In this document: piece after piece, positions 23,078-42,581 of the stretch | Layout: each line of letters starts with the position of its first letter | How positions within the stretch are numbered: position 1 is the stretch's first letter | Virus record (IMG/VR): IMGVR_UViG_3300019776_000324 | Coordinates: 1-64,000 of that record | Length of the DNA stretch: 64,000 nucleotides | Direction: 5' to 3' (one strand) | Position numbers and translations under genes: made by a program | The notes under the pieces: generated by a model | Seen by the model: only the letters and a program-made list of their open reading frames with translations | What the model was told of the DNA's origin: nothing | Database searches by the model: none

Positions 23078-24122
23078 AAAGCAGTATAACAATCTGCGTA
23101 CAGAGATCTTAGATGTCACTGATGAAGTGTTAAGGTCAGGACAACTCATGGCTGGCAATTATACCGCAGAGTTTGAAAATTGGCTGGCTCATCGCAATCA
23201 CAGCAAATACGCTATAACATGTCACTCAGGCAGTCAAGCCCTAGAGATAATTGCCGAATACTATCGTACACAAACTAGTACTCGCCCACCCAGAGTAGTT
23301 GTACCATCAATGACTTATGTGGCCACTGCTAATGCATTTATACGAGCAGGTTGGGAAGTATGGATCGCAGACACTGACAAGTACGGTTTACTAGACAACA
23401 AGAAGCATGTGCCTGTGGATCTAAGTGTACAAGCAACTGTGCTGGTTGGCCTGTATGGTGCGGCTGTTAATGCTGATCGCTTTTGGGGTACGGACCTAGT
23501 TATAGAAGATGGTGCACAACACTGGTTGGCAAACAATTCAAATCGTGTGGGCAATGCTTGTGCTATCAGCTTTGACCCTATGAAGAACTTGAATGCTTAT
23601 GGCAACGGTGGTGCTGTAGTAACTGACGATATAGACTTGTTGGAGTTTGCTAGAGAGTGGACCAACAATGGCAAGCCCACGCACACAAACATAGGCACTA
23701 ACAGTAGAATGAGTGAGATAGAGTGTGCGCAGATGATGGTTAAAACACAGCACATTGATTCATGGCAAGCTCGTCGTGAAAACATATCCAAGTACTGGAT
23801 GGGCCGATTAAAGAACACAGGTATTAGAAGTTTAATTGATGCACACAATGTTGAAACACACTCGTATCACAAGTTTGTTATTGATGTGGACAATAGAGAT
23901 ATCCTTGCTCGTAACTTGGATATCAAAGGCATTGAAACTAGAGTACACTACAAGCAACCGCTACATGAACTGCCAGCTTACAGTAATTGCACTGGTCCTG
24001 ACATGTTAAGTGTTGCCAGTGCGTTGTCACGCAGAGTATTAAGTTTACCTATCTATCCAGAACTAACTGATCTGGAAGTAGAATATATTATTGATCAGGT
24101 ATTAGATTCCGCTTTATCATAG
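23043..24122 (+). CDS. DegT/DnrJ/EryC1/StrS PLP-dependent sugar aminotransferase
   Basis: 'TYVATANA', 'IEDGAQ', PLP-lysine motif 'SFDPMKNLNAYGNGG' and 'LSLPIYP'. Confidence 0.9.
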   Translation: MPGLKIPFTGLKKQYNNLRTEILDVTDEVLRSGQLMAGNYTAEFENWLAHRNHSKYAITCHSGSQALEIIAEYYRTQTSTRPPRVVVPSMTYVATANAFIRAGWEVWIADTDKYGLLDNKKHVPVDLSVQATVLVGLYGAAVNADRFWGTDLVIEDGAQHWLANNSNRVGNACAISFDPMKNLNAYGNGGAVVTDDIDLLEFAREWTNNGKPTHTNIGTNSRMSEIECAQMMVKTQHIDSWQARRENISKYWMGRLKNTGIRSLIDAHNVETHSYHKFVIDVDNRDILARNLDIKGIETRVHYKQPLHELPAYSNCTGPDMLSVASALSRRVLSLPIYPELTDLEVEYIIDQVLDSALS

Positions 24123-26484: not shown

Positions 26485-27568
26485 GATTAGAATAGACGAA
26501 ATTTACAACAATACTTTTTGGCCTTGGTTTGCTAAAAATAGACCCGGCACCAGAGTGTTTTTTTGTGACCCTTTTGGGCATACTGATCGTGATCATTTAT
26601 TTAATCTTGGCACGGATGACATGGTAGAAAACGACTATGTGTATTTGCATGATCAAGAACCTGTTCATTTAGACCTGCACCAACCCTTGTTTGACGATGT
26701 TATCCGACGAAACGAAGATATCTGGGCCAAACCCGCAGGACATATTGTAGTCAGCGAACGCGGTGAATTTGTTGAAGAACTCAGCAGACAATACGGATGG
26801 ACCACACACTATTACTTCTTTCACGGCTGGGCTTGTCAGGACTGGTTCCGCGGCTACGATAAAACATTCCTTATTCCCAGAGCTAGAGATCGTAGCCCTA
26901 CTAGGACTTTTATGAGTCCCAATCGTATTGTAGCAGGCAAGCGTGATCATCGTGTGTTGTTTCTTTATAATGTGTTTAAGCATGGGCTAGAGTCAAATCA
27001 TATATCAGCACCCAGAACTTGTCAGTACGAAGGTGTAGATATTAGTAGTATAGCACAAAAGTATCAACATGTATACCAGGATATTACTCAAGTGTTTGAT
27101 CAAGCTGAATTACCCAGATTATTTGAGGGAGAAGAGCAACAGGAAATGACCAGTTGTTGGTTAAGCAACTTCACAGAAGCCCAAGATAGTTTAGTATATG
27201 TGCCTACTGAAACTGTGTACTTTGGGCGCAGACAGCACATAACCGAAAAGACATTTAAAGCAATAGCATTAGAAATGCCCTTTGTTCTAGTAGCACCCGC
27301 AGGCAGTTTGGCGTATATGCGTGAATACGGATTTAAGACTTTTGATACTGTATTTGACGAAAGCTACGATACCGAAACCAACGATGTTCGTAGAATAGAA
27401 CGGGTAACCAAACTATTAAAAGAATTAGATAGTTTAAGTTTAAAAGAAAGACAGCAAATACATCGTGCATGTTTACCCATAGTAGAACACAATTTTAATC
27501 ATTTCTATTCAGGCGGACTTACTGAAGTATTATGGGCAGAACTCAGGGCCATGTTAAATGAGTTTTAA
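26483..27568 (+). CDS. Glycosyltransferase-like protein (ET..TEKTFK..PF family)
   Basis: 'PTETVYF...ITEKTFKAIALEMPF...GFKTF...DESYD' resembles the GT10/GT-B donor-binding motif. Confidence 0.55.
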   Translation: MIRIDEIYNNTFWPWFAKNRPGTRVFFCDPFGHTDRDHLFNLGTDDMVENDYVYLHDQEPVHLDLHQPLFDDVIRRNEDIWAKPAGHIVVSERGEFVEELSRQYGWTTHYYFFHGWACQDWFRGYDKTFLIPRARDRSPTRTFMSPNRIVAGKRDHRVLFLYNVFKHGLESNHISAPRTCQYEGVDISSIAQKYQHVYQDITQVFDQAELPRLFEGEEQQEMTSCWLSNFTEAQDSLVYVPTETVYFGRRQHITEKTFKAIALEMPFVLVAPAGSLAYMREYGFKTFDTVFDESYDTETNDVRRIERVTKLLKELDSLSLKERQQIHRACLPIVEHNFNHFYSGGLTEVLWAELRAMLNEF

Positions 27569-28706
27569 CTTTGTTTGCGATCGTATAGTCAAGGACAAAG
27601 CATATCCAGCCTTAGCTCAACATCAAGCAGAACCTTATACACAGCAGTGGCGCGAATTTGTGCAGCATTGGCCCAATACAGTGCCTTGTGAGCTACACGA
27701 GCACTGTTCAACACACGGTTATCCATATACCTTAAGCACAGACACAGGTGACTATTACTGTATAGGCTTGGGCTTCTTTAATTTTGATACAGATTATATT
27801 GCGCTAATTCCTGAAAAGATTCGAAAAGAATCCTGCACTATTTTATTCTATTATCATGAAGGCGATAATCCAGCAAACATTAAAAAAAGACTAGATCATT
27901 TATGTGATCAACATGGTGTGAGTAGAGATCTTTATCGATTCATTTCGGGTAATACTGCCGCAGACAAAATACCTCAATTCGCATGGTTCCCTGATCACGA
28001 GCTATTATACTGGCATCGCAACCGTAGTGTACTGCCTGCTAGTGTACACTTGAACCCTAGACCCTATGACTTTACCTTGTTAAGCCGTACACACAAGTGG
28101 TGGCGGGCTACTGTGGTCACAGACCTACATCGTTCAGGGCTATTAGACTCAAGTCAGTGGAGTTATAATACTGTAGACATAGGTGATCAGCCCGAGGACA
28201 ACCCAATTGAAATAGACAGTTTAAATATTAGAGATCATGTTGAGGCTTTTTTAGCAGGAGCGCCATATAGCTGTGATAGCTTGACAGCCGAAGAACACAA
28301 TGATCACCATCGTACTGAATATCAGCACTACCAGGCCAGTTACTTTAATATCATACTAGAAACTCATTTTGATGCTGACGGCAGCGGTGGAGCCTTTTTA
28401 ACAGAAAAGACTTTTAAACCCATCAAACACGGACAACCGTTTGTTGTAGTGGGCGCACCAGGTACATTAGCAGCATTAAGAACCCTGGGCTATCGTACAT
28501 TTGATTCAGTATTAGATAACACATACGATACTATAACAGATAATACTCAACGCTGGTTGGCAGTTCGATCCGTAATTGAACGAATTAAATCCAATCCTGC
28601 GCATTACTTTAAACTGTGTTTAAATGATATTCTACACAACCAACAATTATTTGCCGCTAGCAAATACAACCGCTTAAATAGCTTACTTGAAAGATTACAA
28701 AAATGA
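27551..28706 (+). CDS. Glycosyltransferase-like protein (ET..TEKTFK..PF family); ORF 27558-28706
   Basis: 'ILETHF...LTEKTFKPIKHGQPF...GYRTFD'. Confidence 0.55.
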
Positions 28707-30264: not shown

Positions 30265-31773
30265 TTAAGAGCAGACCTTTACTCCATATAATGCTTCAAA
30301 GCGGTCAGCGTCTGCTCTATCATTTACCATGGGCTCGCCTCTTATATTAAGACTAGTGTTTAATAACATAGGACAGCCAGTTAACACATACCATTTTTCA
30401 AGTAGCTTTCTAATGCCTGAGCCATTATCTGGCACCGTTTGTACTCGGCTAGTACCGTCGTGATGCACAATAGCAGGAAAAGCGTCAGGCTGGCGGCAAT
30501 AAGCTGTTGACTGCATATAAGGACTATGGCGGAAACCACAGGGCATACTAAAAAATTCATTAGCAAGCTCATCCAATATAACTGGCGCAAATGGCCTAAA
30601 CTTTTGTCTACGCTTGATTTCATTTACACGATCCTTTATATCCGGTCCTCGGGGGTCGGCGAGGAGACTTCTATTGCCCAGTGCCCTAGGGCCGAATTCG
30701 GCTCGTCCTGAAGCAACTCCAACGATCTTATCCCGTAGTAAGCTATCGAGTAGGGCATTGACAGGATATTCTCCGCCGATGTTATGACCCAAGTATGCGT
30801 GATCAAACTTAATTGGGCCACCATAGGCGAGGGCAGCAGCTCCGAGACTGCTACCGCTATCGCCAGGGCTAGGCATAATCCATATGTTTTCAAAATAATT
30901 TCCAAGTTCTCTATTAGCTAAACAGTTCAGGGCAACGCCGCCCTGGTATACTAGATTTGTGCTGAACCCAAAATTCTGGGCCCTAAGCATAACACTATAT
31001 ATCAATTCTTCTACCAAGTGCTGTGCTGCACCTGCAATATCATAATCATCAACACCGGCCATAAAGTTCGAGTCCAAGCCCAGGTGTAAATTCTCTTTAA
31101 ATTCAATATCTTTAATGCTGCGAATCAATTGCTCGCGCATGGGAATAGCATATACATTACCGTGTGTACTGTAAGCACTCATGCCCATGGTAATATATTC
31201 TTCGTCTAGTGGGTGTAGGCCAACTCGCTGAGTAATTGCACTATAAAAGAGTCCGATTGAATGTGGGTATTTTTGTCCCCAAAGCTTCTTATAAACTGCA
31301 CGACCCGTTCGATCATATTCTGCTCCGTATATTGATATTGTATCAAACTCACCTATGGCATCTATTACCACAACAGTGGCACGATCAAAAGGACTGGTTT
31401 GGAAGCCACTTGCTGCGTGACTTAAATGATGGTTATAGCATACTGTTTTTCTGGGTGCGTGTAACAACTGATCGCCCAGTTGTTCTTTTAACATGCTGTT
31501 TACTGTTAAACGCTTAACATCAAAGCCTTCACCTGACCGCAAGCGTCTTAATTGCTTCATCCAAGGACGCTCGTACCAGGCTACTGTATCTATATAATAG
31601 TTAGAAAACTCTGCCAGCAAAGCAGGGCATATATCAGCGTCATTCTTTTGTTTACTGTAACGCTCACTGTGCCCAGCAAATACAATTTCACCGTGGGTAT
31701 TAATTAGTGTGGCTGCTGCGTCGTGAAAGCCTGCGCTGACACCTAGAATATTTTTATAAGGCTCTAATTTCAT
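30265..31773 (-). CDS. O-carbamoyltransferase (NodU/CmcH/TobZ family)
   Basis: 'HDAAA', 'HHLSHAAS', 'GGVALN', 'EFGPRALGNRS', 'FRPFAP', 'DGTSRVQTV' and 'LLNTSLNIRGEP'. Confidence 0.95.
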   Translation of the reverse strand: MKLEPYKNILGVSAGFHDAAATLINTHGEIVFAGHSERYSKQKNDADICPALLAEFSNYYIDTVAWYERPWMKQLRRLRSGEGFDVKRLTVNSMLKEQLGDQLLHAPRKTVCYNHHLSHAASGFQTSPFDRATVVVIDAIGEFDTISIYGAEYDRTGRAVYKKLWGQKYPHSIGLFYSAITQRVGLHPLDEEYITMGMSAYSTHGNVYAIPMREQLIRSIKDIEFKENLHLGLDSNFMAGVDDYDIAGAAQHLVEELIYSVMLRAQNFGFSTNLVYQGGVALNCLANRELGNYFENIWIMPSPGDSGSSLGAAALAYGGPIKFDHAYLGHNIGGEYPVNALLDSLLRDKIVGVASGRAEFGPRALGNRSLLADPRGPDIKDRVNEIKRRQKFRPFAPVILDELANEFFSMPCGFRHSPYMQSTAYCRQPDAFPAIVHHDGTSRVQTVPDNGSGIRKLLEKWYVLTGCPMLLNTSLNIRGEPMVNDRADADRFEALYGVKVCS

Positions 31774-31871
31774 TTATAGATAAATGGATCTCTTTTACGC
31801 AGTTCTTTTAATTTTTTGCGGTATCTAATTTCCAATTTAATTTTATTAATTAAGTTTGTAATCCACTTCAT
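31770..31871 (-). CDS. 33-aa basic peptide coupled to the carbamoyltransferase (missing from ORF track)
   Basis: MKWITNLINKIKLEIRYRKKLKELRKRDPFIYK; ATGA overlaps at both ends. Confidence 0.7.
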   Translation of the reverse strand: MKWITNLINKIKLEIRYRKKLKELRKRDPFIYK

Positions 31872-32902
31872 TTTAATTCCTTTATTTGTAGTAGAGCATA
31901 ATCAGGATCAGCCCACGAATATGGATATGTTGCTTCTGCATCGCTGGTTCTTATTGCTGCTACATCGAGACGAGTATTTAACTTGTCCCATATATAGCGG
32001 TAATCTTCTGTGCCAAAGCTACGCCGTAAGTCTACTTGTCCTACCTTAGGATGTCCTATAGTTAGTGTTTTATCTTCTGGGTCAAAGCCATTGTCTGTTA
32101 ACCAGCCGCGAAACTCCTTTAACTGCTTGATCTGCCAAGGAAATGCGCCGGGATCATTGGCCCATTCTATATCAAAATCGCCTGCGGCCAAGGTCTGTGC
32201 TGCTAGTGTTGTAGTAGTTAATTCATCGATACGGCTGTCTCTGCCTTCGTCACAAAACACTTCCCAATGGTGCTTGCCCACTGCTTTATTAACTCCCACA
32301 TATACTCCGCCCAAGCTACGGTTAATTGTTTCTATGCCAAACAGCTCATAATCCTCCGCATCCAGTGCAAAGCGTGGAGCATTTAGCCAGCACATTAATT
32401 GACTGGGTCTTTGCCATTCGGGTGCTGTGTGCTTTTTACGCCAACTTAATTGCCATGATTCAAACTCATGACACAGTAAATTTAACTGTCTAATATGCCA
32501 GCGTGTAGCAGGATCTGCTTGTGCGTATAAAGGACTAGGAGCAGCAGCAGTACCTTGTAGATCTTCAAAGTATCTGTGTAGCAGATTAAACTGTGCATGA
32601 TTAACTCCGCCCGAATCGTCTACACTGTTTTCTAGCGTAAAATGATTGTCAATTTGATAGTTTAATTCGCTGGCATTAATTGCAGCAATGGAACGATTAA
32701 TTTCTTTGATTAATAATTCACCGTTGCGTGGACCGTCTGCAAAGCCAAAGAAACAATAGTTCTTTTCTAAATGATAATTGTTGCGGATTAATTCATTTAA
32801 TGCTGCCAGCCATTTACGACTTAAACTGTTGTCGTACACATTGATATAAACAGTTAGATCATTTAGATCTAATTCAACAACATCAAGTAATAATTGATTC
32901 AT
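31868..32902 (-). CDS. Hypothetical protein (344 aa)
   Basis: In operon; 'NLLHRYFE' and 'LNLLCHEFE' His/Glu motifs could bind metal. Confidence 0.75.
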   Translation of the reverse strand: MNQLLLDVVELDLNDLTVYINVYDNSLSRKWLAALNELIRNNYHLEKNYCFFGFADGPRNGELLIKEINRSIAAINASELNYQIDNHFTLENSVDDSGGVNHAQFNLLHRYFEDLQGTAAAPSPLYAQADPATRWHIRQLNLLCHEFESWQLSWRKKHTAPEWQRPSQLMCWLNAPRFALDAEDYELFGIETINRSLGGVYVGVNKAVGKHHWEVFCDEGRDSRIDELTTTTLAAQTLAAGDFDIEWANDPGAFPWQIKQLKEFRGWLTDNGFDPEDKTLTIGHPKVGQVDLRRSFGTEDYRYIWDKLNTRLDVAAIRTSDAEATYPYSWADPDYALLQIKELK

Positions 32903-34175
32903 ACCATTCCTGTATTTCTTTATCTTCGCTTAGGATATCTCCTAGCGTATATGCGTCGCCACGGATCGCTTCTAATTGTAACACACGACGCTTGCCCTTT
33001 ACAAGTCCTGCTTGATGCGTGTCAGGCCATTGTTCTGCAAATACAGGGCGTGTCTTTAACTGTACCAGCACATCCTGTAACGAACCCGAGGTTAAGGGTA
33101 TTAATTCATCCAATTTACGGTGTAATACAGATCGAGGTAGTGCTAGCGGACTTAATAAGATATCGGGTGAAAAGCTGAATACTACTTTGGCCAGGATTTC
33201 AGTGTCTAATTCTTGTGCAAGTCGCATAATGCGTTCAATTTCAAACAGTCCGGGCAAGGTAAGTGTAAAGTCGATTCGGACCTGGCGGCTGTAATGTCTG
33301 TGTGCAACTGCTTGACGCATGTTTCTAAGCCATGAATCGTAGTCGAGGCCTGTTCTAATGTATTCGCCAATCCGGCCCGTTCCGTCGATGCTCGCACAGA
33401 TCTGGTAATCTCGAATATGATCAAGAATATCACTGAACAGGTTAATACCCCTATAGTCACAACGACTAAGGTTGGTATTGTATCTAGCGTATATCTTAGG
33501 CCCATCACCCAGTTCAATTATGCGTTTCATATAACGCCAGTGTTGCTCGTACATTAGGGGCTCTCCGCCTACCCAATATACTTCTTCTACACGGTGTTCT
33601 TCAACAGCTTGAGCAAACTCTGCTTCAATTTGGCTGTCCTGAAACGCTGTAATCTCTTTCTTAACTTCTGGCAACATCCAATTGTTCTTGGAATTTGACC
33701 AGTCTATCATGTTGTGTGTACGCTGTTCTGATTCCCACGCACTTGACAACATGTCACCACACATACGGCACTTAAAGTTACACAAGTTACTGAAACGATA
33801 ATCCCAGCTAACGGGTTTCATTTCGGTTGCGCCATCTGCTGTGGTTAGCTCCATAGCTAATGGGTATTTACTGCCAAATAAATGATCGAAATATGTACGG
33901 TAAACCGCAGTGTTTAGCAGTTTATCATTGCATACAGCGCACTCAGGCAACTCTTCTCCGGCCATCATTCTGCGACGCACACTCTTCATATGCTCACTAT
34001 TCCAGTGTTCTTCTAAGCTGATAGGAATATACCGGCCCGTGCCTGAGCTAGTATCTATATACTGTTCAAAGTTCTGTGCAGGCTCACGGCTAGCGCAACA
34101 CATACGCCGTTCTGTTTGTGGACTTAGATAAGTGTGTGTCCACGGTGCCATGCACAAGGTTGCTGGTTTTGTCAT
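32883..34175 (-). CDS. Radical SAM protein with N-terminal twitch/SPASM-like Cys cluster
   Basis: CNFKCRMC and GGEP; N-terminal C..PW...CC...CxxC. Confidence 0.9.
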   Translation of the reverse strand: MTKPATLCMAPWTHTYLSPQTERRMCCASREPAQNFEQYIDTSSGTGRYIPISLEEHWNSEHMKSVRRRMMAGEELPECAVCNDKLLNTAVYRTYFDHLFGSKYPLAMELTTADGATEMKPVSWDYRFSNLCNFKCRMCGDMLSSAWESEQRTHNMIDWSNSKNNWMLPEVKKEITAFQDSQIEAEFAQAVEEHRVEEVYWVGGEPLMYEQHWRYMKRIIELGDGPKIYARYNTNLSRCDYRGINLFSDILDHIRDYQICASIDGTGRIGEYIRTGLDYDSWLRNMRQAVAHRHYSRQVRIDFTLTLPGLFEIERIMRLAQELDTEILAKVVFSFSPDILLSPLALPRSVLHRKLDELIPLTSGSLQDVLVQLKTRPVFAEQWPDTHQAGLVKGKRRVLQLEAIRGDAYTLGDILSEDKEIQEWYESIIT

Positions 34176-35395
34176 TAAAAGTCTGCTTTATTATATTCAA
34201 TTATGGCTGCAAACTCTGGCTCAGCTAGACTTAAATCTTGATTGCGTTTACGATCTAAATCAGCTATTTTCATTTTGAGTAAAAAGCCATCTAAACTTGC
34301 GCCATTATTCATAAAATCTACAACACGATCAAATTCACCGCGAGCATGATCATTTACTTGAACAGTGGCCAATTTGGCAGCAATTACTTGTTTGGCTGTG
34401 TCGGGCAAGGTACTGATACTAAAATAATAAGCTTCATGCATCATATTCCAATAGACATAATCAAACCCTTGAGCATAAACAAATTCAGCCAGTTCATCCA
34501 AGTAATAAACATTAAACACATTAATGGTGCAACAGAATTGTAATTGTATATTTGTGTGTCTGCTCTTTAATTGTTTAAATCTTTCAATATTAACTTGTAC
34601 TTCGGACCAAACAGCGCCGGATCGTTGATATTCAAAGCGTGAACCAACATCATCAATACTTACAGCTATTTCAACCATTTTAAAATGGCTCCAAATTGAT
34701 TCAGCTTCTTCGGGATATTGTGTGCCATTTGTATTGTAATGAATTTCAATATTGCCAGCAATACCGCGATCAACTAGGCCTCGAAGCATGTCAAAGTGTT
34801 CGCGAATCATAAAAGGCTCGCCACCTGTAAACTCTATATAACGAATTTGATCTACTACTTGATCTATTTCAGTCCAAAAATTAGGATTCTCTCTGGGCCA
34901 TGCACCTTGTCTAAGCATTTGATAATGATGGCTGGACTTCTTTTGTTCGGGTGGCATGAACTGTAGTTCTTCTGTGGCAAATGTACTTGAACTCCATGAG
35001 CCGCAAATACGGCACTTTAAGTTGCAGATATTACCCAGCTTTAGATCCAAGAACATCAGGGGTTTGGCATCTAAGGTCCAGTCAGCTTCGTTGGCCAGCA
35101 TGTGCTTTAAACGGTCTAAGGTATGCATACGCTTGCTGGTACGGCCTGCTCGCTCTTCTCTAAAGCATTTGCGACATGTTTGCGGTTGCTTCTTGTCTAC
35201 AAACTCCTGGCGCAACTTACGCATGCTATGGCTATTTTGTATAGTGCTAAAGCTGGCAGTAGCTAGATTAAACTTCTCTCCGGCATTGTCTACCAGTTCT
35301 TCTTCAGCCAAACAGCAAGGGCGTACTGTGCCAATAGGACTGGCTTCTATACTGACCCAGGGCAATACGCAAAATTTATCGTGTGGTATATTCAT
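34175..35395 (-). CDS. Radical SAM protein with N-terminal twitch/SPASM-like Cys cluster
   Basis: CNLKCRIC and TGGEPF; N-terminal CVLPW...PCC...CRKC. Confidence 0.9.
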   Translation of the reverse strand: MNIPHDKFCVLPWVSIEASPIGTVRPCCLAEEELVDNAGEKFNLATASFSTIQNSHSMRKLRQEFVDKKQPQTCRKCFREERAGRTSKRMHTLDRLKHMLANEADWTLDAKPLMFLDLKLGNICNLKCRICGSWSSSTFATEELQFMPPEQKKSSHHYQMLRQGAWPRENPNFWTEIDQVVDQIRYIEFTGGEPFMIREHFDMLRGLVDRGIAGNIEIHYNTNGTQYPEEAESIWSHFKMVEIAVSIDDVGSRFEYQRSGAVWSEVQVNIERFKQLKSRHTNIQLQFCCTINVFNVYYLDELAEFVYAQGFDYVYWNMMHEAYYFSISTLPDTAKQVIAAKLATVQVNDHARGEFDRVVDFMNNGASLDGFLLKMKIADLDRKRNQDLSLAEPEFAAIIEYNKADF

Positions 35396-36852
35396 TGTGG
35401 CGGTATTAAATTAAGTGTTTGTTTTACTTCTTGCTGTATAGCTTCGGGCAAGTTGTAAAACTCTTCAACAGTGGAAATCGTAGGCCAACCGGGGTCAGCT
35501 ACATCGGCGTAACCTTGTACAAAGGCCTGCTGTTCTGCTTGATACTTACTGCTGTATTTTAAAATTTGTTTGAGCTCTGGAACTACTGCCAGTAAACTTT
35601 CATTACGCACTGCATCCAAGTCCGTGGTTAAATTCCAAAACTTGTCTAGTAAGTGGCTGTTGTCCTGTGCCATCATAAACTCAATTGCGCCTTGGAATCC
35701 GCCCACTGCTCGTTGTATTGTATCAATGGGTCGTAGCCATTCGATATGCTGTTCAAACTCTGCTTTGAATTGGAGTTTTACATCCTCGGGCAACACATCA
35801 ATTCTGTATGCTTCTGGTCCTTGTAGTATGTTCAAGTTAAAGTCTTTGGCTTCAATAAAGCCCGATTCGACCATGTAACGATGGAAGCGAGTAAAGTTCC
35901 AAATATTCATCATGCTTAAGGTAGGACTGATCATAAAGTCTATATGCGGACATTCACGCTTGAGATCTCTAATGTTTTGTTCTACTTTGGCCCAGTCCGT
36001 TCCTGAGCGTATAACTTCTGCTCGATCGCCCATGTCATCCAAGCTGGCAGCCACGCATACATTAGGAAACTGTTTCCATAGCTCTAGTACGCTTTCTTTT
36101 TTAAAGCGCAAATCATTTAGGTTGGTATTGTAAATTAACCGTACATTGGTGTTGCCCTTTTCTATCAGCAACTTTAATATGCGATTATGCTCTTCCATGA
36201 TTAGCGGTTCGCCGCCGGCAAAGTAGATTTGATCTAAATGGGGAATATGCTCTTGCATCTGCTCCCATACATCTTCTTCGTGACGGCCAGCAAACTGTAC
36301 ACGGGGGCGTAGTTCTTTACCCCATAGCTTGACATCATCGTCGTACCAGCGACTGCTAAAGATACTACCGCAACTACGGCATTTGAGCTGACAGATGTTA
36401 CTGAAGCGCACATCCCAGTAGTGTAGCTTAAAGTCTGGTACACTGCCGTCTGCACGGGTTTGATCTATTTCAGCTATGTGTTGCCCAAAGTTCTTGTTTG
36501 AGTTGTTGCGCATACTGGCAAAGCCAAATGATTCCTGCTCGTAGCAATCACCGCATTCTTTACAAGGCAAATCTGCCAGCATGTTTCTACGCATTTGCCG
36601 CATGGGCTCATCGTTCCAGATTTCACGCATGGGCTTTTGTTTAAAGTTGCCCACAGGATGTTCGGCCTTGCCCAAACAGCAAGGATAAGCACGACCATCG
36701 GGCCATGCGTGTAAATGTATCCAAGGTAGCATACAGAAAGTGTCTGACTCCATGAGTCTGTGCTTTTGTTGTTCTGTTAGTTGTTCCAGCTTGATATAAC
36801 TGGGCACACGGTCTTGCCAGTTGTACTTGCCTATAATTTTTTGTTCGCTCAT
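35392..36852 (-). CDS. Radical SAM protein with N-terminal twitch/SPASM-like Cys cluster
   Basis: CQLKCRSC and AGGEPL; N-terminal CMLPW...PCC...CGDC. Confidence 0.9.
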   Translation of the reverse strand: MSEQKIIGKYNWQDRVPSYIKLEQLTEQQKHRLMESDTFCMLPWIHLHAWPDGRAYPCCLGKAEHPVGNFKQKPMREIWNDEPMRQMRRNMLADLPCKECGDCYEQESFGFASMRNNSNKNFGQHIAEIDQTRADGSVPDFKLHYWDVRFSNICQLKCRSCGSIFSSRWYDDDVKLWGKELRPRVQFAGRHEEDVWEQMQEHIPHLDQIYFAGGEPLIMEEHNRILKLLIEKGNTNVRLIYNTNLNDLRFKKESVLELWKQFPNVCVAASLDDMGDRAEVIRSGTDWAKVEQNIRDLKRECPHIDFMISPTLSMMNIWNFTRFHRYMVESGFIEAKDFNLNILQGPEAYRIDVLPEDVKLQFKAEFEQHIEWLRPIDTIQRAVGGFQGAIEFMMAQDNSHLLDKFWNLTTDLDAVRNESLLAVVPELKQILKYSSKYQAEQQAFVQGYADVADPGWPTISTVEEFYNLPEAIQQEVKQTLNLIPPQ

Positions 36853-38180
36853 AATGTATTGTACCAGTCTGCTAGTTGTGGGAATGTTTTGGTAAAGTTC
36901 TTGCCACGGCGTTGATCGTATTGAGTGTAGAACTGTTTAAAATCATTCAACAACTTGGGCATGTCAAATGCTTCCGAATGCGGAGTTTTAACCACATCCA
37001 AGTAATCAATTAACCGTTGCATGTGATTGATTTCGTGCTCGTGTAACAGTGGACTAGTTCTGTTAAGATCTAACCATGCCTGTAAACTATCTTTGTACTG
37101 TGTTCTCAGTGTGTCTGGAAGCACTAATGCACTTTGAAAACTTGGAAAGCGCAGGATGTTTAGTGTAAAACTAACACGCTCACGCCCATAACAAGTCTTG
37201 AGATGGTTAATAGAATTCAGCAGTTTAGGTAAGGTTTCTAAACATAAGGCGTTGATAGTGGCCATACAATGTACAGCACGAATATCGTCTGAATCCAACA
37301 AGCGTTGTACATTGCGCAACCAAGCTGAATAATCCAGGCCGTCGCGCACATACTCTGCTTGTTCAGCCGTGGCTTCCTGGCTGGTGTATATGTCTACTTC
37401 TAGTCCATCAATGCTTGATAACAAGCGATCTAAGTCTACTTCTGGACCCAGGTTACTGTTAATGGCTAGTCGTGTTTGACTTTTGCCCTTGTTCTCTTTG
37501 AACCAGTCGAGTAGCTTCCAAGTGTCGCCCGACATAAGCGGCTCCCCGCCCGTGATGCGTAACTCTTGGAGTGTTTTATGCAGGTCTGACTCCCACCACT
37601 TAAAGAACGCTTCAACATAGGGATTCGTTTCGCCAAACTTGTATAGTTGACTGCTAGGGTGATCATGAGTAAAGTGGTTACGCCCATCAGACACCAAGGA
37701 CTCATAGGGACCGTTGGATCGTATGTCTTTAACCCATGTGCTACTGAAAGCAGGGTTACAATAGCTACAAGCGAATTGGCAAGTGCGATCGAATGCGATT
37801 TCAAGTGTGCGAAGATTGACATCTTCTTGGTGTGGTTTTGTGTATGCTTCATCTAGGGCCTCTATAGGGTAAATTTTACTTTTGTACACACGATCGCTAA
37901 TAGCATCGCGACCCATGTCTTCAATCTTCCAGCAGTATTCACAGCCTCTAGGACGCTGGCCGATCTGCATGTTTAGTCGATCTATCTTCTTTTCCACTGT
38001 GTTGTGTATAGCACTGGGATTGGTTTTGATCAATTCCTCATCAATTTTGTGTGCTGGAGGATGATGACAACTTGTAGTCTGTCCTGATCCTAGCCATATA
38101 GTAGCGTTGTACCATTTGGCAGCGCAGAAGCTGGCACTTTTTGTGTCCAGCACTTGTTGTTTAAATTCCAAATCGTTCAT
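36849..38180 (-). CDS. Radical SAM protein (CxAKW/SCxH subtype)
   Basis: CQFACSYC and TGGEPL; N-terminal CAAKW...SCHH...CEYCW. Confidence 0.9.
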   Translation of the reverse strand: MNDLEFKQQVLDTKSASFCAAKWYNATIWLGSGQTTSCHHPPAHKIDEELIKTNPSAIHNTVEKKIDRLNMQIGQRPRGCEYCWKIEDMGRDAISDRVYKSKIYPIEALDEAYTKPHQEDVNLRTLEIAFDRTCQFACSYCNPAFSSTWVKDIRSNGPYESLVSDGRNHFTHDHPSSQLYKFGETNPYVEAFFKWWESDLHKTLQELRITGGEPLMSGDTWKLLDWFKENKGKSQTRLAINSNLGPEVDLDRLLSSIDGLEVDIYTSQEATAEQAEYVRDGLDYSAWLRNVQRLLDSDDIRAVHCMATINALCLETLPKLLNSINHLKTCYGRERVSFTLNILRFPSFQSALVLPDTLRTQYKDSLQAWLDLNRTSPLLHEHEINHMQRLIDYLDVVKTPHSEAFDMPKLLNDFKQFYTQYDQRRGKNFTKTFPQLADWYNTL

Positions 38181-39291
38181 GTATGTATTGTTCAAAGTGT
38201 TTGGGGAATTCTTGGCGAATGCTAGGGCGAAGTTCTAGCATCAATTGTTGATTGTATTTACATGTTTCGTCTGCGGCAGTTATAAAAGCTGGCAAGTCCT
38301 GCCGACAAAGGTCCTCTACTACTTGCGCTATTCGCTCAAGTCTAGTTTGATTATCCTCAATAAGATCAAAACTTTCATCAATCAAGTGTCCAAATGTGCG
38401 AAATCCTAGGTTGTGTAAGTCTCGATAGTAGCCATAGTTACTAGCCACAATAAATGGGTGACCCATAGCCACTGGTTTCCATATCTTTTCTGTTCTAAAA
38501 GAATGCGGATAGGTAAACACTGTTTCAGTAACTAGACTAAAGTAAGTGTCAAGGTACGGCAAGGGTGCTAGATATATTTCGCCCCACTCTCGTTTGAACA
38601 AATGATTTTTAGCATAGAATCCATCTGTTGAATCTTTAGCTGGTACTGCTACTGCTTGGGATTGATATCTATCAACTTCGTATTTTGGAGGCAAATAGTG
38701 TATGGGATTCTCTGTCAGTTTAATATCTAGTAGTTCGGTGTTGCCCACAACATCATCCAAGTTTGTCCAAAGGCATTGATCAATCAAACCAGACTCTTTA
38801 AAACTATCTAATAGATATTTTCTATGAGCACGGAATCTACCATTTAAAAACAAAAACTTATATGGACGGTCTGTGCTTTTCTTTTCTTGGTACTCAGCAA
38901 TTGCCTGTATATTTTCTTCGTAGTCGTGTACTAATGTTAGAAAATGTTCATGATACAAGTGCGGTATTTCTGTGGGCAGGTGCCCGCCAACAATAAGTCC
39001 TACAGGAAGATTATGGGTCAACATGTATTCAATACCAAAAGTACGATACATCCATAACATACTGTAAGATCCTTCAGCAGGGTTACATAGTATTGCAGTT
39101 ATGGTATTGCTTGAAACTAATTCTTGTATGCGGTTTTTATGCTCAGCAAACTGTTGCCGACCAAATATGTATATTGCACCTGGAATGATTTTGCACTCAT
39201 TTAAATCCCAAAACTCTTCGTCTGCATAGGGTTTAAGTAGATTTTGTATTTCACAAAAGCTGTTTAATACTACTTTACGATTGCCGAGCAT
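38161..39291 (-). CDS. Glycosyltransferase-like protein (ET..TEKxxK..PF family)
   Basis: 'VTETVF...RTEKIWKPVAMGHPF...GFRTF...DESFD'. Confidence 0.55.
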   Translation of the reverse strand: MLGNRKVVLNSFCEIQNLLKPYADEEFWDLNECKIIPGAIYIFGRQQFAEHKNRIQELVSSNTITAILCNPAEGSYSMLWMYRTFGIEYMLTHNLPVGLIVGGHLPTEIPHLYHEHFLTLVHDYEENIQAIAEYQEKKSTDRPYKFLFLNGRFRAHRKYLLDSFKESGLIDQCLWTNLDDVVGNTELLDIKLTENPIHYLPPKYEVDRYQSQAVAVPAKDSTDGFYAKNHLFKREWGEIYLAPLPYLDTYFSLVTETVFTYPHSFRTEKIWKPVAMGHPFIVASNYGYYRDLHNLGFRTFGHLIDESFDLIEDNQTRLERIAQVVEDLCRQDLPAFITAADETCKYNQQLMLELRPSIRQEFPKHFEQYIHERFGI

Positions 39292-40687
39292 AGTACTCAC
39301 ACTCCTTCCACCATGCTGACATTTCTGGAAATACAGTTAAAAAGTCTGTGCCGTGGCGACGGTCTGCTTCGCTGAAGAACTTAAAGAAGTCTGCTTTACA
39401 TTGATTAATGTATGCAGGATCTAGCTTTTGTCCGTCGCGCATCCACGCAATATCTCTATCCAATCTAGCAATCTCATAGTCCTTGAATCCTTGAAAGCGT
39501 GTGGCGTCTGTTTCAATTTGACGGATCATCCAGGCCCACAAGTGTTCTAGTTGCTCTACATAGCTTTCTGGAAGTATTTGTAAACTTTGCCAGGCAGGTT
39601 GTCTAAGCACAGGAGTATCAAACCATACACGCTGATAAGTTTTACTGTATATTTTTCTTAGACCCAGGATACCAGCAAACAAACTACTTAGGTTAGTCAC
39701 ACTTAGGTTATTCATAGTGACAATAAAAGTTATACTGTTATAACTAGGAACTTCAGTAAGGAATTGATTTACACGATCCCACAACAAATCAAAGTCAAGA
39801 CCGTGTCTGATGTACTCTGCTTGTGGTCCAAAGCTGTCCAAGCTGATGTACTGCATAAAGTGTTCCAAGTTGCCTTCTTGGCATAGTTGTTTACAATAGC
39901 CCAGGTACTTTTGCCAGGTCTTTTCGTCTACACTGAAGTTGCTGGTTACATTTAAGTGTAGATCTGGCTTGGGGTTGGCCAACACATAATCAAACACACG
40001 ATAGGTATTCTTGTCTAGCATGGGCTCGCCACCAGTCATGCGGAAGTGCTGTAGTTCTGGGTACAAGGTAGGCCACCAATCCCAAAACGCATCTACATAA
40101 GGATTATCATGGCTAACAGGGATAGGCTTATTACGACCGGTGAAATGGCTAGGATCGTTATGAGTAGTACTTGTAGGGTATCCGCCGTACTTGTCCACCT
40201 CAGCTTGCCAAGTGCTTGAAAATTGCGGACTGCAATAACTACAAGCCAAGTTACAAACATGATTGAAATTAACTTCCACATAGCTAGGTGTAACATCTTC
40301 ATCTCCGGTTGAATTCATTATACTATCAAAGTCTTTGGCGGCCCATGGTTCACCAGATCGATAGTGGCGGTCGCTTAACTTGTTGTTATCTTCCATAGCC
40401 CAGCAATAAGAGCATTCGCTAGGGCGTTCTTGCTTTAACATAATCTTACGCTGTTCTTTCTTATGCGGAGTATTATGTAGTGCTGACGAATTGTCTGCTA
40501 ATAGGCCAGCATCAATTGGGTGCAGGGGAGGATGATAACAACTGTTGTTGAGTCCGGTAGGCAAGTGTAGGCTAACTTGTTTCCATTTGGCCAAACACAT
40601 GCCGTGACCCAAGCGATCCTTCATCTCTTCTGCTGAGCTTAAGAACTTGCTTTTGTTATCTACTGATTCGTCGCCTTTGTTATTCAT
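39275..40687 (-). CDS. Radical SAM protein (CxAKW/SCxH subtype)
   Basis: CNLACSYC and TGGEPM; N-terminal CLAKW...SCYH...CSYCW. Confidence 0.9.
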   Translation of the reverse strand: MNNKGDESVDNKSKFLSSAEEMKDRLGHGMCLAKWKQVSLHLPTGLNNSCYHPPLHPIDAGLLADNSSALHNTPHKKEQRKIMLKQERPSECSYCWAMEDNNKLSDRHYRSGEPWAAKDFDSIMNSTGDEDVTPSYVEVNFNHVCNLACSYCSPQFSSTWQAEVDKYGGYPTSTTHNDPSHFTGRNKPIPVSHDNPYVDAFWDWWPTLYPELQHFRMTGGEPMLDKNTYRVFDYVLANPKPDLHLNVTSNFSVDEKTWQKYLGYCKQLCQEGNLEHFMQYISLDSFGPQAEYIRHGLDFDLLWDRVNQFLTEVPSYNSITFIVTMNNLSVTNLSSLFAGILGLRKIYSKTYQRVWFDTPVLRQPAWQSLQILPESYVEQLEHLWAWMIRQIETDATRFQGFKDYEIARLDRDIAWMRDGQKLDPAYINQCKADFFKFFSEADRRHGTDFLTVFPEMSAWWKECEYYARQS

Positions 40688-41321
40688 TGTGGAAATGCCC
40701 TTGAGAATATTGCCATGATCCTAGTTGTTCCTGTACATAATCCAAGTTTGAAAACATGTCAGATAAAGGAAAAGCAAATTGATTTTTAAAAATGTTTGTT
40801 TGAGTGTTAAAAGTTAAGTTCTCGTAACACAATACAAAGTCTGGTAAAAAATAATCATCTACCAGTTGTTCTAGTTTAAACTGATCAATATCTTGTTTGG
40901 TTGCTGTGATTTCTTTTTCTTTCACTCTTGTATTATTTGGGGTGTGATTATGCCAGCCGTGTAATCCTGTTGGATCCATAACTCTAAAGTATATCCAACT
41001 TGAAAATTGTTTTACTTTATCCATGCGCTTGATGTTGACAATTATGTTGCGTTGTTTAATTTGATCTACATCGATTGCCAGGGTCATTTTGGGAGTCAAC
41101 TGAACTAGTTGCGCTACTGTAAGTGTTGATGCTGAAGATAACTTGTTGATATCATCCCACGGATTATCACAATATCCTACCTTGCAAATTTCTTCTAAGT
41201 TTTTTGCACCACTGATTGCACAAAGTTCTGCAGATAGGGCATGAGTTCCGGATCGCGGAGCTCCTATAATTAAAATATTTTTCTGCTGTTGTTTAGCACA
41301 ATCAATAATAGTTTGATACAT
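40680..41321 (-). CDS. Sulfotransferase-like P-loop protein
   Basis: 'IIGAPRSGTHAL' (5'-PSB-like), 'KRMDKVKQFSSW' (3'-PB-like) and 'YENL'. Confidence 0.55.
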   Translation of the reverse strand: MYQTIIDCAKQQQKNILIIGAPRSGTHALSAELCAISGAKNLEEICKVGYCDNPWDDINKLSSASTLTVAQLVQLTPKMTLAIDVDQIKQRNIIVNIKRMDKVKQFSSWIYFRVMDPTGLHGWHNHTPNNTRVKEKEITATKQDIDQFKLEQLVDDYFLPDFVLCYENLTFNTQTNIFKNQFAFPLSDMFSNLDYVQEQLGSWQYSQGHFHNE

Positions 41322-42247
41322 TACCAACCTTCTTGGCTTCTAATAACATCCATTTCTCTGATCATAACTCCTTGGTTATGCCAGTTACTGCGATAATGCT
41401 GTTTAAAGAATTTACTTTCCGGCCCTAGTATATTGAGCATTGATAAATCTAATTGTGTAGCAAGATCTTCAGCTACTAGTCCAGCAACCATTTCGGGGTT
41501 TTTATCTTCTATAGTTGACCACAGTTCTTTTAGTGCATCAAAACTTTGTACTTGTTTGTAGTCCCATTCAGGAGTAATCATGGTCATGTAGGTGCCCATT
41601 CTTGCGCCAGCAATGGCCCAGATACCATGGTCAACATCGCGTCCTACATTGTGCCATATAGTTAAATGATCCAAGTTACGATGATGCACACGATTTTTAA
41701 ATTCTTGTAAGCTAGGGCGGGCACCTTTGTTTAGGCACATCTTAACACCTTCGCGGAAGCCAGCTCGCCATGCTTGGAACGCACTGGCATTAGGATATGT
41801 AGTACTGTAGCAATCGTGCATGGCAATGTAGTTAGGATAAAAACAAAACTCCACATCATTCTCTGCTGTGCCGTCTGTATTCTCGTGCGTTTTCATGTTG
41901 TAAACAAAATCCTTAGTCCAACAACTTAGTCCACCATTGCCATACATGAGTCCGTTGATGTGATTGCGAGCTCTCCAACGGAATACACAATCTTCATCGC
42001 GTTCTTGTAGGGTCAGTGTCAAGTTAAAAAACTTATCATCTGGAATGTTGTCGCCGTCAATTAACACAAAGCGATCTGTATTACTAGCATCTGCTGCTGC
42101 TTTATGTGCTGCATCCGATCCTTTAACACCATCTACACGAACAGCCCAAGGTACCATGTTTTTAATTTTAACCCAGGTATCTTCTTTGTTGGGTTCGTCG
42201 TAGCTTAGATAAACACAATCTAAATCTGCAATATCAATTTGTTTCAT
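41321..42247 (-). CDS. Glycosyltransferase-like protein (GT-A, DxD)
   Basis: 'YLSYDEPN', 'IDGDN' DxD, 'NGLMYGNGG' and 'AWRAGFREGVK'. Confidence 0.6.
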   Translation of the reverse strand: MKQIDIADLDCVYLSYDEPNKEDTWVKIKNMVPWAVRVDGVKGSDAAHKAAADASNTDRFVLIDGDNIPDDKFFNLTLTLQERDEDCVFRWRARNHINGLMYGNGGLSCWTKDFVYNMKTHENTDGTAENDVEFCFYPNYIAMHDCYSTTYPNASAFQAWRAGFREGVKMCLNKGARPSLQEFKNRVHHRNLDHLTIWHNVGRDVDHGIWAIAGARMGTYMTMITPEWDYKQVQSFDALKELWSTIEDKNPEMVAGLVAEDLATQLDLSMLNILGPESKFFKQHYRSNWHNQGVMIREMDVIRSQEGW

Positions 42248-42581
42248 TTCTTGTTTTGTTCCATTTTGTATGTGGTAGCGAGTTGTCAACTACAATACAA
42301 ACATCGTACGGGCTACATGCTGTGCCTGCGGTGCTGGGTTGTAGTTTTGTTATAGTTCTAATTGGTTTAATGTGGACCAGTTTATTGTTAATTACTTTGA
42401 CATTAAACGGCGCTAGAACATAAGTTTTTTGATCGACTTCTATATAATTACCTGGCAACTCCTCCATGCTATAGATAATAGGACTTCCGTCGTCATTGTA
42501 ATACAATCTGTAGAATATTGGCTTTGCTTCGGGCATAGCATATAAGATTGACCAGAATTCGTCTGGAGTCATTTCACTCAT
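42234..42581 (-). CDS. Hypothetical protein
   Basis: Coupled ORF; 'FYRLYYNDDGS'. Confidence 0.7.
   Translation of the reverse strand: MSEMTPDEFWSILYAMPEAKPIFYRLYYNDDGSPIIYSMEELPGNYIEVDQKTYVLAPFNVKVINNKLVHIKPIRTITKLQPSTAGTACSPYDVCIVVDNSLPHTKWNKTRNETN

What the first reader, a model, noticed from the sequence alone, without database searches (positions are those of the whole stretch)
32883..40687. Five tandem radical SAM paralogs with the auxiliary Cys cluster N-terminal, in two subtypes
Seen: all five have CxxxCxxC plus GGEP. The extra cluster motif (C..PW...CC...CxxC in three; C.AKW...SC.H...CxYCW in two) lies before the SAM motif. Established: SPASM/twitch auxiliary clusters are canonically C-terminal (anSME, BtrN, MoaA). 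Inference: this is a permuted twitch architecture expanded by duplication, with each copy possibly oxidising or epimerising a different sugar position. The second subtype may use His as an Fe-S ligand.
Basis: partly seen in the sequence, partly recalled or inferred. Interest (0 to 1): 0.68.

Follow-up and report, generated by a model that had tools for sequence, protein, structure and literature searches.

The report
Phage array of N-terminal-twitch radical SAM enzymes
Five old, diverged copies of a catalogued but unstudied radical SAM enzyme family, whose extra iron-sulfur domain sits at the front of the protein, lie in a conserved operon of a 344-kb freshwater jumbo phage beside sugar-pathway genes, where they probably tailor a sugar or glycan.

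Summary
Window 32883-40687 (- strand) has five intact radical SAM genes with CxxxCxxC, GGEP and an upstream Cys motif. It also has a sixth, non-rSAM gene (38161-39300) between copies 4 and 5.

The permuted-twitch reading is right but not new. All five score 286-408 bits (cut-off 170) on NCBIfam NF033640, "N_Twi_rSAM, twitch domain-containing radical SAM protein". The N-terminal domain aligns to the C-terminal twitch of BtrN, Cys on Cys.

Four twitch Cys are kept in 117-119 of 119 family members, including all 15 of subtype 2. A His ligand is therefore not needed.

The copies are only 15-36% identical and each groups with a different subfamily, so this is not a recent local duplication. The genome holds 12 such genes. 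Orthologues of R1, R3, R4 and R5 are present in 47 of 47 related phage loci.

Neighbours are a carbamoyltransferase, GT2-like and possible GT10-like proteins, an NDP-sugar dehydratase/epimerase and a DegT aminotransferase. About a third of bacterial loci show similar neighbours.

My best reading is stepwise radical tailoring of a sugar or glycan (confidence about 0.45). No substrate is known for this family.

The parts
32883..34175 (-). R1, N_Twi radical SAM, subtype 1 (430 aa). Twitch Cys region 33930-34154; CxxxCxxC 33759-33782.
   Evidence: NF033640 285.9 bits vs cut-off 170. Pfam SPASM at residues 8-83 and Radical_SAM at 127-312. Coordinates checked. Orthologue present in 47/47 related loci.
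34175..35395 (-). R2, N_Twi radical SAM, subtype 1 (406 aa). Twitch 35165-35371; CxxxCxxC 35003-35026.
   Evidence: NF033640 328.3 bits. AF2 model has pLDDT 93.2 and pTM 0.91. Core matches viperin, BlsE, SkfB and anSME at Z 11.7-12.1. Orthologue present in 35/47 loci.
35392..36852 (-). R3, N_Twi radical SAM, subtype 1 (486 aa). Twitch 36544-36735; CxxxCxxC 36370-36393.
   Evidence: NF033640 408.4 bits. Pfam SPASM E 3.6e-12 at residues 40-103. 4626 word-search relatives at E<=1e-10. Orthologue present in 47/47 loci.
36849..38195 (-). R4, N_Twi radical SAM, subtype 2 (448 aa). Twitch 37932-38126; CxxxCxxC 37758-37781.
   Evidence: NF033640 291.7 bits. AF2 model has pLDDT 94.7 and pTM 0.92. Core matches BlsE Z 13.7, DesII 13.5 and MoaA 13.3. 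The nearest Atlas clusters are all viral, one named 'twitch domain-containing radical SAM'. Orthologue present in 47/47 loci.
38161..39300 (-). 379-aa non-rSAM gene inside the array; possible GT10-like glycosyltransferase (a lead only).
   Evidence: No Pfam or PHROG hit. The Atlas gives viral hypothetical clusters; the nearest named cluster is GT10 at only 0.78-0.79. It is a paralogue of 26483-27568 and 27558-28706. No PDB support. Present in 15/47 related loci.
39275..40687 (-). R5, N_Twi radical SAM, subtype 2 (470 aa). Twitch 40403-40597; CxxxCxxC 40232-40255.
   Evidence: NF033640 305 bits. 35% identical orthologue in Ralstonia phage RsoM2USA (ORF349), flanked there by two GT2-like genes. 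Orthologue present in 47/47 loci.
40680..41327 (-). 215-aa ORF with a GAPRSGTH P-loop; possible sulfotransferase (weak).
   Evidence: Only sub-threshold Pfam hits: Sulfotransfer_1 E 0.042 and Sulfotransfer_3 E 0.05. No orthologue at >=40% identity in 47 related loci.
41321..42289 (-). GT2-like glycosyltransferase (322 aa), conserved partner of R5.
   Evidence: Atlas score 0.99 to a viral cluster named 'Glycosyltransferase 2-like domain-containing protein'. Pfam Glyco_tranf_2_3 is sub-threshold at E 0.0048. Present in 46/47 loci. 44% identical gene next to the R5 orthologue in RsoM2USA.
31868..32902 (-). 344-aa conserved protein of unknown function, overlapping the R1 stop.
   Evidence: No family or PDB hit. 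Present in the same position in 30/47 loci at >=40% identity, and weaker in the others.
30265..31773 (-). NodU/CmcH-type carbamoyltransferase at the end of the array.
   Evidence: Pfam Carbam_trans_N 1.4e-31 and Carbam_trans_C 1.4e-47. phrog_1601. Present in 44/47 loci. The same family also lies next to N_Twi genes in 3 bacterial loci and in L080.
26483..28706 (+). Two paralogues (361 and 382 aa) of the 379-aa gene that sits inside the array.
   Evidence: blastp E 1e-9 to 5e-17 and a shared C-terminal motif. Copies of these families sit inside the rSAM array in many related loci.
24088..26484 (-). 798-aa ORF whose C-terminus (residues 550-726) is homologous to the GT2-like gene.
   Evidence: blastp E 5e-6. 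Conserved flank of the island. Its homologue in L080 lies next to DegT and an epimerase.
23031..24122 (+). DegT/DnrJ/EryC1 sugar aminotransferase.
   Evidence: Pfam E 3.5e-58.
22109..23077 (+). NDP-sugar epimerase/4,6-dehydratase.
   Evidence: Pfam Epimerase 1.8e-42 and GDP_Man_Dehyd 1.4e-33.

Best explanation
R1-R5 are five distinct, anciently diverged members of the NCBIfam family N_Twi_rSAM (NF033640). Each has three parts: an N-terminal twitch domain (beta-hairpin plus helices) with four invariant Cys, which should bind a fully Cys-ligated auxiliary [4Fe-4S] cluster as in BtrN; a partial TIM-barrel radical SAM core with CxxxCxxC and GGEP; and a C-terminal helical region. They are translationally coupled in one operon. 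That operon is part of a glycan island in the tail/baseplate gene block of a 344-kb freshwater jumbo phage: NDP-sugar dehydratase/epimerase, DegT aminotransferase, two GT2-like and three possible GT10-like proteins, and a carbamoyltransferase.

Most likely mechanism (inferred, not shown). Each enzyme cleaves SAM to a 5'-deoxyadenosyl radical and abstracts an H atom from a different position or intermediate of a (nucleotide-)sugar or nascent glycan. The auxiliary cluster takes or gives the electron, so the net step is oxidation, epimerisation or dehydration. The glycosyl- and carbamoyl-transferases then build and cap the product. Its target, whether virion fibre or tail proteins or a host envelope glycan, is unknown.

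Shown: family membership, domain order, Cys conservation, conserved synteny. Inferred: cluster binding, sugar substrate, one step per paralogue.
For: Family and architecture:
- NF033640 scores are 286-408 bits against a cut-off of 170, over the full profile.
- Pfam SPASM matches the N-terminus of R1-R3.
- Profile positions 5-74 align to the BtrN twitch (residues 166-237), with its Cys on the family Cys. BtrN's auxiliary cluster has four Cys ligands and acts in a two-electron oxidation (PMC9012708).
- AF2 models reach pLDDT 93-95, with a hairpin-plus-helix N-domain followed by the barrel.
- The core matches BlsE, DesII, MoaA, SkfB and anSME at Z 12-13.7.
- The four Cys are kept in 117-119 of 119 sequences.

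Distinct functions:
- Paralogues are 15-36% identical.
- Each sits with a different subfamily in the tree.
- Orthologues are 44-88% identical, and R1, R3, R4 and R5 are present in 47/47 related loci in a fixed order.
- Natural fusions of 2-3 units exist.

Sugar context:
- Carbamoyltransferase, GT2-like, epimerase/dehydratase and DegT.
- A distant viral contig has an array of about eight rSAM genes plus carbamoyltransferase, DegT and an epimerase.
- RsoM2USA keeps GT2-like, R5, GT2-like next to its tail genes.
- 22 of 65 bacterial loci have an epimerase, DegT, UDP-sugar dehydrogenase, PMT_2, AlgX-like, UbiA or carbamoyltransferase neighbour.
Against: - No member of the family has a known substrate, and open-access literature searches found nothing on an N-terminal twitch.
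- 43 of 65 bacterial loci show no carbohydrate-type neighbour.
- Seven other N_Twi copies of this genome lie among replication and repair genes, not sugar genes.
- The glycosyltransferase calls are weak: GT2-like rests on an Atlas cluster name and a sub-threshold Pfam hit, and GT10-like is only a lead with no PDB support.
- Structural neighbours that act on sugars tie with those that act on peptides.
- The phage has no sugar nucleotidyltransferase.
- Model coordinates could not be read, so the Cys geometry and the distance between clusters were not measured.
Confidence: 0.45

Rival explanations
1. The enzymes are protein or peptide maturases. They would modify residues of virion proteins, such as the neighbouring 4718-aa fibre-like protein or tail proteins, or a small peptide, as anSME, sactisynthases and PqqE do. 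The glycosyltransferases would then act on the same proteins.
For: - The array sits in the tail/baseplate block, both here (baseplate wedge and giant ORF) and in RsoM2USA beside confirmed structural proteins.
- Most characterised SPASM/twitch relatives that match the core (SkfB, SuiB, CteB, anSME, ChlB, TigE) act on peptides.
- Multi-rSAM arrays and an ABC transporter in 8 bacterial loci recall RiPP clusters.
Against: - There is no RRE/PqqD-like domain, because the N-terminus is taken by the twitch.
- No conserved Cys-, Ser- or Thr-rich precursor ORF lies in the island; the small ORFs are either ordinary conserved proteins or present in few loci.
- The only NCBIfam model passed is NF033640. 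Every peptide-maturase model scores far below its cut-off.
Confidence: 0.25
2. The enzymes act on nucleotides or nucleic acids, either for DNA or tRNA hypermodification or to make or destroy modified nucleotides in the conflict with host defences.
For: - Seven other N_Twi copies lie among SbcCD-like, DnaB-like, clamp-loader and ClpP genes.
- ThyX lies 11 kb from the array.
- The cores resemble viperin and MoaA, which act on NTPs.
Against: - The viperin model scores 15-28 bits against a cut-off of 180.
- No 7-deazaguanine genes lie next to the rSAM gene at 114108.
- The conserved partners of the window array are a GT2-like protein and a carbamoyltransferase, not DNA-modification genes.
Confidence: 0.1
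3. The enzymes tailor a lipid or polyprenyl-linked molecule, such as an envelope glycolipid, rather than a soluble sugar.
For: In Bacteroidota the commonest neighbours are UbiA prenyltransferases (12 loci), PhyH dioxygenases (10 loci, 36 ORFs) and WelO5-like oxygenases (5 loci).
Against: The phage island has no UbiA or PhyH gene. UbiA-type enzymes also make polyprenyl-phospho-sugars, so this overlaps with the glycan reading rather than excluding it.
Confidence: 0.1

Closest known systems
NCBIfam NF033640, N_Twi_rSAM (twitch domain-containing radical SAM protein)
   Same: All five genes pass the curated cut-off over the full model length. They share the domain order and the Cys pattern.
   Different: The family is a 'subfamily' model with no assigned function. 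The phage copies fall into at least five deep branches of it, two of them in a His-rich subtype 2.
BtrN (2-deoxy-scyllo-inosamine dehydrogenase, PDB 4M7T/4M7S)
   Same: Twitch domain with the pattern C-x17/18-C ... CxxC, giving four Cys ligands. The two align Cys on Cys. BtrN acts on a small carbohydrate-like substrate in a two-electron oxidation.
   Different: In BtrN the twitch is C-terminal; here it is N-terminal, followed by a linker of 35-55 residues. The proteins here are 130-200 residues longer and have an extra C-terminal helical region. The similarity is weak (E 8.5e-6 with the whole profile, 0.015 with the domain alone).
anSME / AslB (anaerobic sulfatase maturase), the name JGI gives many homologues
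   Same: Radical SAM core of the SPASM/twitch group, Z 11.7-12.8.
   Different: anSME has a C-terminal 7-Cys SPASM domain with two clusters and acts on a protein. The sulfatase_rSAM model does not hit any of the five. The AslB label in metagenome records is an over-annotation.
BlsE and DesII (radical SAM enzymes acting on nucleotide-sugars)
   Same: Best or tied-best structural matches of the core: Z 13.7 and 13.5 for R4, and 12.1 (BlsE) for R2.
   Different: The equivalog model rSAM_BlsE scores 24 bits against a cut-off of 400. The matches cover the barrel only, and they tie with peptide-modifying enzymes.
MoaA (GTP 3',8-cyclase)
   Same: A twitch-type enzyme with core Z 11.2-13.3.
   Different: MoaA's auxiliary cluster has three Cys and an open Fe that binds GTP. 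Here four Cys are invariant. The moaA model scores 23-27 bits against a cut-off of 284.

Membership tests
NCBIfam NF033640 N_Twi_rSAM | Whole-protein HMM score at or above the curated cut-off (170 bits), over the full profile | tested here: met
   R1 285.9, R2 328.3, R3 408.4, R4 291.7 and R5 305.0 bits. Profile coverage runs from positions 1-4 to 386-398 of 398.
NCBIfam NF033640 N_Twi_rSAM | Twitch-type Cys domain placed N-terminal to the CxxxCxxC motif | tested here: met
   The four Cys lie 43-51 residues or more upstream of CxxxCxxC in all five. They are invariant in 117-119 of 119 family sequences.
Radical SAM superfamily (PF04055) | CxxxCxxC cluster motif, GGE SAM-binding motif and a partial TIM barrel | tested here: met
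   The motifs are present in all five. The Pfam gathering score is passed by R1-R3 (34.5-41.8 vs 29.5) but not by R4 or R5 (22.4 and 16.8). The AF2 barrels match solved rSAM cores at Z 12-13.7.
SPASM/twitch domain (PF13186, TIGR04085) | Sequence match to the SPASM/twitch model | tested here: met
   R1 22.0, R2 30.8 and R3 46.8 bits against a cut-off of 21.5. R4 and R5 are not detected by Pfam, but they align with R1-R3 and with the BtrN twitch through the family profile.
SPASM/twitch domain (PF13186, TIGR04085) | Domain is a C-terminal extension of the core (as stated in PMC9012708) | tested here: not met
   The domain lies at residues 8-103, before the core, in all five. Three other rSAM genes of the same genome have it at the C-terminus.
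Full SPASM (two auxiliary clusters) | Seven-Cys motif CX9-15GX4C...CX2CX5CX3C...C | tested here: not met
   Only four (subtype 2) or five (subtype 1) conserved Cys are present in the domain. This fits a single cluster, that is, a twitch.
BtrN-like fully ligated auxiliary [4Fe-4S] | Four Cys that actually bind a cluster | not testable with these tools
   Only sequence alignment and conservation are available. Model coordinates could not be read, and there are no Fe/S or EPR data.
Anaerobic sulfatase maturase (TIGR03942) | Equivalog HMM score above the cut-off | tested here: not met
   No hit at E<=0.01 for any of the five.
Prokaryotic viperin (NF038283) | Equivalog HMM score of 180 bits or more | tested here: not met
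   15.6-28.1 bits.

The most novel reading that the evidence does not exclude
This jumbo-phage lineage runs a virus-encoded, multi-step radical pathway. Four to eight N_Twi radical SAM enzymes per operon and 12-15 rSAM genes per genome, with glycosyl- and carbamoyl-transferases, would build a heavily rearranged sugar or glycan on the virion fibres or tail (or on the host surface). The subtype-2 His patch would form a second metal or substrate site. That would give the first substrates for a family of more than 8000 sequence clusters, and a new kind of phage virion chemistry.
Probability: 0.2. Interest if true: 0.8.

Novelty: new member of a known kind. Interest (0 to 1): 0.5.

Why it matters
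The family is very large: 8784 clusters at 50% identity at E<=1e-30. It occurs as multi-copy arrays in phages and in predatory and Bacteroidota bacteria, yet it has no known substrate. The phage operon offers a compact, conserved set of five distinct subfamilies with candidate partner enzymes. A culturable relative, Ralstonia phage RsoM2USA (ORF348-350), would allow one orthologue to be tested genetically. Finding the substrate would annotate thousands of genes now mislabelled as AslB or 'organic radical activating enzyme'. It would also show why jumbo phages invest in oxygen-sensitive radical chemistry.

Tried and rejected
- Megablast of the region against cultured phages found nothing. Only tblastn gave distant hits: Vibrio phages K566/K567, RsoM2USA and a marine SAG virus.
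A closer alignment, A5, worked.
- A 7-deazaguanine DNA-modification cluster around the rSAM gene at 114108 was rejected: no QueC/D/E, FolE or DpdA hits.
- His as a cluster ligand in subtype 2 was rejected, because four Cys are invariant.
- Recent tandem duplication was rejected.
- Decayed or inactive copies were rejected: all motifs are intact and orthologues are conserved.
- The promoter and terminator scans are at chance level (51 vs 48.3; 21 vs 16), so they say nothing about operon limits.
- PDB sequence searches for the GT2-like, 344-aa and GT10-like proteins gave nothing. The sulfotransferase reading of the 215-aa ORF stays sub-threshold.
- No flavodoxin and no sugar nucleotidyltransferase is encoded by the phage.
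- No conserved precursor-like small ORF was found.
- The IQ-TREE run did not finish in the time allowed, so FastTree was used instead and its supports are SH-like only.
- Sequencing runs gave only small shares in freshwater metagenomes and no RNA run.
- Literature searches for an N-terminal twitch or SPASM domain, circular permutation, or rSAM in jumbo or huge phages found nothing relevant.


Full report
WHAT IS THERE

The window is the first 64 kb of a 344,244-bp virus record with direct terminal repeats. It is a jumbo myophage, distantly related to the Atu_ph07, XacN1/RsoM2USA, SCTP-2 and 121Q group: its baseplate wedge protein is 27-31% identical to theirs.

On the - strand, 32883-40687 holds six tightly overlapping ORFs.
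- Five carry CxxxCxxC and GGEP: R1 (430 aa), R2 (406 aa), R3 (486 aa), R4 (448 aa) and R5 (470 aa).
- A 379-aa ORF without these motifs lies between R4 and R5.

IDENTITY

All five match one curated NCBIfam model, NF033640 'N_Twi_rSAM, twitch domain-containing radical SAM protein'. Scores are 286-408 bits against a cut-off of 170, over the whole model. Every other model is far below its cut-off, including viperin, MoaA, BlsE and the peptide maturases; the sulfatase maturase model gives no hit at all.

Several results show that the N-terminal domain is a twitch.
- Pfam finds its SPASM model at the N-terminus of R1-R3.
- A profile of the genome's 12 paralogues aligns its first 70 positions to residues 166-237 of BtrN. 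BtrN's twitch Cys fall on the family's first Cys, on the CC pair and on CxxC. The match is weak (E 8.5e-6 with the whole profile, 0.015 for the domain alone).
- Three other rSAM genes of the same genome carry the same hairpin-CC motif at the C-terminus, which is the canonical place.
- A review states that SPASM/twitch domains are C-terminal extensions, that BtrN's auxiliary cluster has four Cys ligands, and that MoaA's has three (PMC9012708).

AF2 models of R4 and R2 are confident (pLDDT 94.7 and 93.2). They show a beta-hairpin plus helices, then the partial barrel, then a helical C-terminal region. The barrels match BlsE, DesII, MoaA, SkfB, anSME and viperin at Z 11.7-13.7, and these matches are tied. 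The Cys geometry therefore remains unmeasured.

CLUSTER LIGANDS AND THE TWO SUBTYPES

I aligned 119 sequences: the 12 paralogues plus 107 single-unit representatives. The four twitch Cys are present in 117-119 of them.

Subtype 2 comprises R4, R5, two further genome copies and 11 representatives.
- It keeps all four Cys in 15 of 15 sequences, so a His ligand is not required.
- It has its own conserved His residues, next to the second Cys and in an HNTP motif. Their role is open.
- It forms one clade with SH-like support 95 in a FastTree tree.

Subtype 1 keeps a fifth Cys, the first of the CC pair, in 98 of 98 sequences.

NOT A RECENT DUPLICATION

The paralogues are 15-36% identical. In the tree each window copy pairs with a different metagenomic representative rather than with another window copy.

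The genome has 12 N-terminal-twitch rSAM genes. Ten pass the cut-off, one scores 163 bits and one 70 bits. It also has three C-terminal-type rSAM genes. Seven of the twelve lie among replication genes: one between SbcD-like and SbcC-like genes, and others next to a DnaB-like helicase, ClpP and a clamp loader.

The array is conserved in related phages. Forty-seven IMG/VR loci span the island.
- Orthologues of R1, R3, R4 and R5 are present in 47/47, and R2 in 35/47. Identities are 44-88%, in a fixed order.
- Four to eight rSAM genes lie between the GT2-like gene and the carbamoyltransferase.
- The 379-aa gene is present in 15/47 loci. The 215-aa ORF has no orthologue in any of them.

The family is huge: 8784 clusters at 50% identity at E<=1e-30. 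Thirty of the best 150 representatives are natural fusions of two or three units, and one fusion mixes both subtypes.

In species-representative bacterial genomes, two short patterns alone found 338 copies. They are mostly in Bacteriovoracaceae and Bdellovibrionales, Bacteroidota, Elusimicrobia and Polyangiaceae. Of 65 bacterial loci, 36 have two to eight copies. Two 'Haliscomenobacter MAG' contigs are in fact this phage type.

CONTEXT AND LIKELY FUNCTION

Downstream of R1 lie a conserved 344-aa protein and a NodU/CmcH-type carbamoyltransferase.

Upstream of R5 lie a 215-aa ORF with a sulfotransferase-like P-loop (sub-threshold) and a GT2-like protein (Atlas 0.99).

The 379-aa gene has two paralogues at 26483-28706. 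These are possibly GT10-like, which is a lead only.

A 798-aa ORF ends in a second GT2-like domain. Next to it lie a DegT aminotransferase and an NDP-sugar dehydratase/epimerase.

The same pairing recurs elsewhere.
- A distant viral contig has an array of about eight rSAM genes plus a carbamoyltransferase, DegT and an epimerase.
- Cultured Ralstonia phage RsoM2USA keeps u253, u241, GT2-like, R5 and GT2-like beside its tail sheath and confirmed structural proteins.
- In bacteria, 22 of 65 loci have carbohydrate-type neighbours.

I therefore favour radical tailoring of a sugar or glycan, one step per paralogue, with a BtrN-like auxiliary cluster as the electron conduit. This rests on context alone, and my confidence is about 0.45.

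The rivals are protein or peptide maturation (0.25), nucleotide or nucleic-acid chemistry (0.1) and lipid-linked substrates (0.1). The scattered copies among replication genes are not explained by the glycan reading.

KNOWN OR NEW

I found no paper on it and no known substrate.

To my knowledge three things are new:
- the conserved five-subfamily operon in a jumbo-phage lineage;
- the size of the rSAM complement per genome;
- the His-rich subtype.

I file it as a new member of a known kind, with moderate interest.

LIMITS

- There are no expression data: only small shares in freshwater metagenomes and no RNA run.
- The costly representative search was used once, to size the family and to build the alignments for folding.

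Noticed in passing
G000:C1 74339-80888, 156385-157374, 207527-208828, 243955-245337, 260035-261195, 288936-289985 (outside the window): Seven more N-terminal-twitch rSAM genes are scattered through the genome, several wedged between replication and repair genes. One lies between SbcD-like and SbcC-like genes with overlapping start and stop codons. Others follow a DnaB-like helicase, ClpP and a clamp-loader ATPase.
   Followed up: partly
G000:C1 79875-80888, 114108-114992, 328456-329655: Three further rSAM genes have the Cys-rich twitch/SPASM-like tail at the usual C-terminal position. None reaches any NCBIfam equivalog cut-off.
   Followed up: partly
window 47769-61925 (-): A 4718-aa ORF with FG-GAP repeats and a CBM_5/12 carbohydrate-binding module lies next to a baseplate wedge gene (61925-63970). 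It is probably a giant fibre or adhesin.
   Followed up: partly
window 36849-38195 and 39275-40687 (twitch regions 37932-38126 and 40403-40597): Subtype 2 has a conserved His patch (SC-H-H-P-x2-H-x-I-D and H-N-T-P) that subtype 1 lacks. Subtype 1 keeps a fifth Cys instead. The role of both is unknown.
   Followed up: partly
L085, L086 (NZ_JBBAKG010000003.1, NZ_JBBAKG010000001.1): Two contigs (148 and 183 kb) binned into a 'Haliscomenobacter sp.' MAG carry the whole island at 46-82% amino-acid identity to the window genes. They are phage contigs of this lineage. This is either a binning artefact or a weak hint of the host.
   Followed up: no
L020 (Ralstonia phage RsoM2USA 215949-222310): A cultured phage keeps the module u253, u241, GT2-like, R5 orthologue (ORF349) and GT2-like beside its tail genes. 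All of these genes are annotated as hypothetical.
   Followed up: partly
P0126-P0160 and others (metagenomic representatives): Thirty of the 150 best family representatives are single polypeptides with two or three complete N_Twi units. P0153 joins a subtype-2 unit to a subtype-1 unit.
   Followed up: partly
window 29719-30264 (-): A 181-aa ORF with an H-x-D ... H pattern recalls 2OG-Fe(II) oxygenases. It has no family hit and is found in only 4 related loci.
   Followed up: no
window 40680-41327 (-): A 215-aa ORF with a GAPRSGTH P-loop has only sub-threshold sulfotransferase hits. It has no orthologue at 40% identity or more in 47 related loci, so it looks like a recent insertion into the array.
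   Followed up: partly
window 2721-3620, 4146-5231, 15584-16867, 18796-19593, 21087-21749 (+): Other genes seen: a TctC-like solute receptor, a MoxR-like AAA ATPase, an HNH endonuclease (phrog_1314), an SPFH/Band 7 protein and ThyX.
   Followed up: no
L117, L106, L110 (Bacteriovoracaceae, Oligoflexia and Halobacteriovoraceae MAGs): Bacterial or MAG loci carry six to nine N_Twi genes in a row, some mixing both subtypes. In Bacteroidota the genes sit with several UbiA, PhyH and WelO5-like genes.
   Followed up: partly
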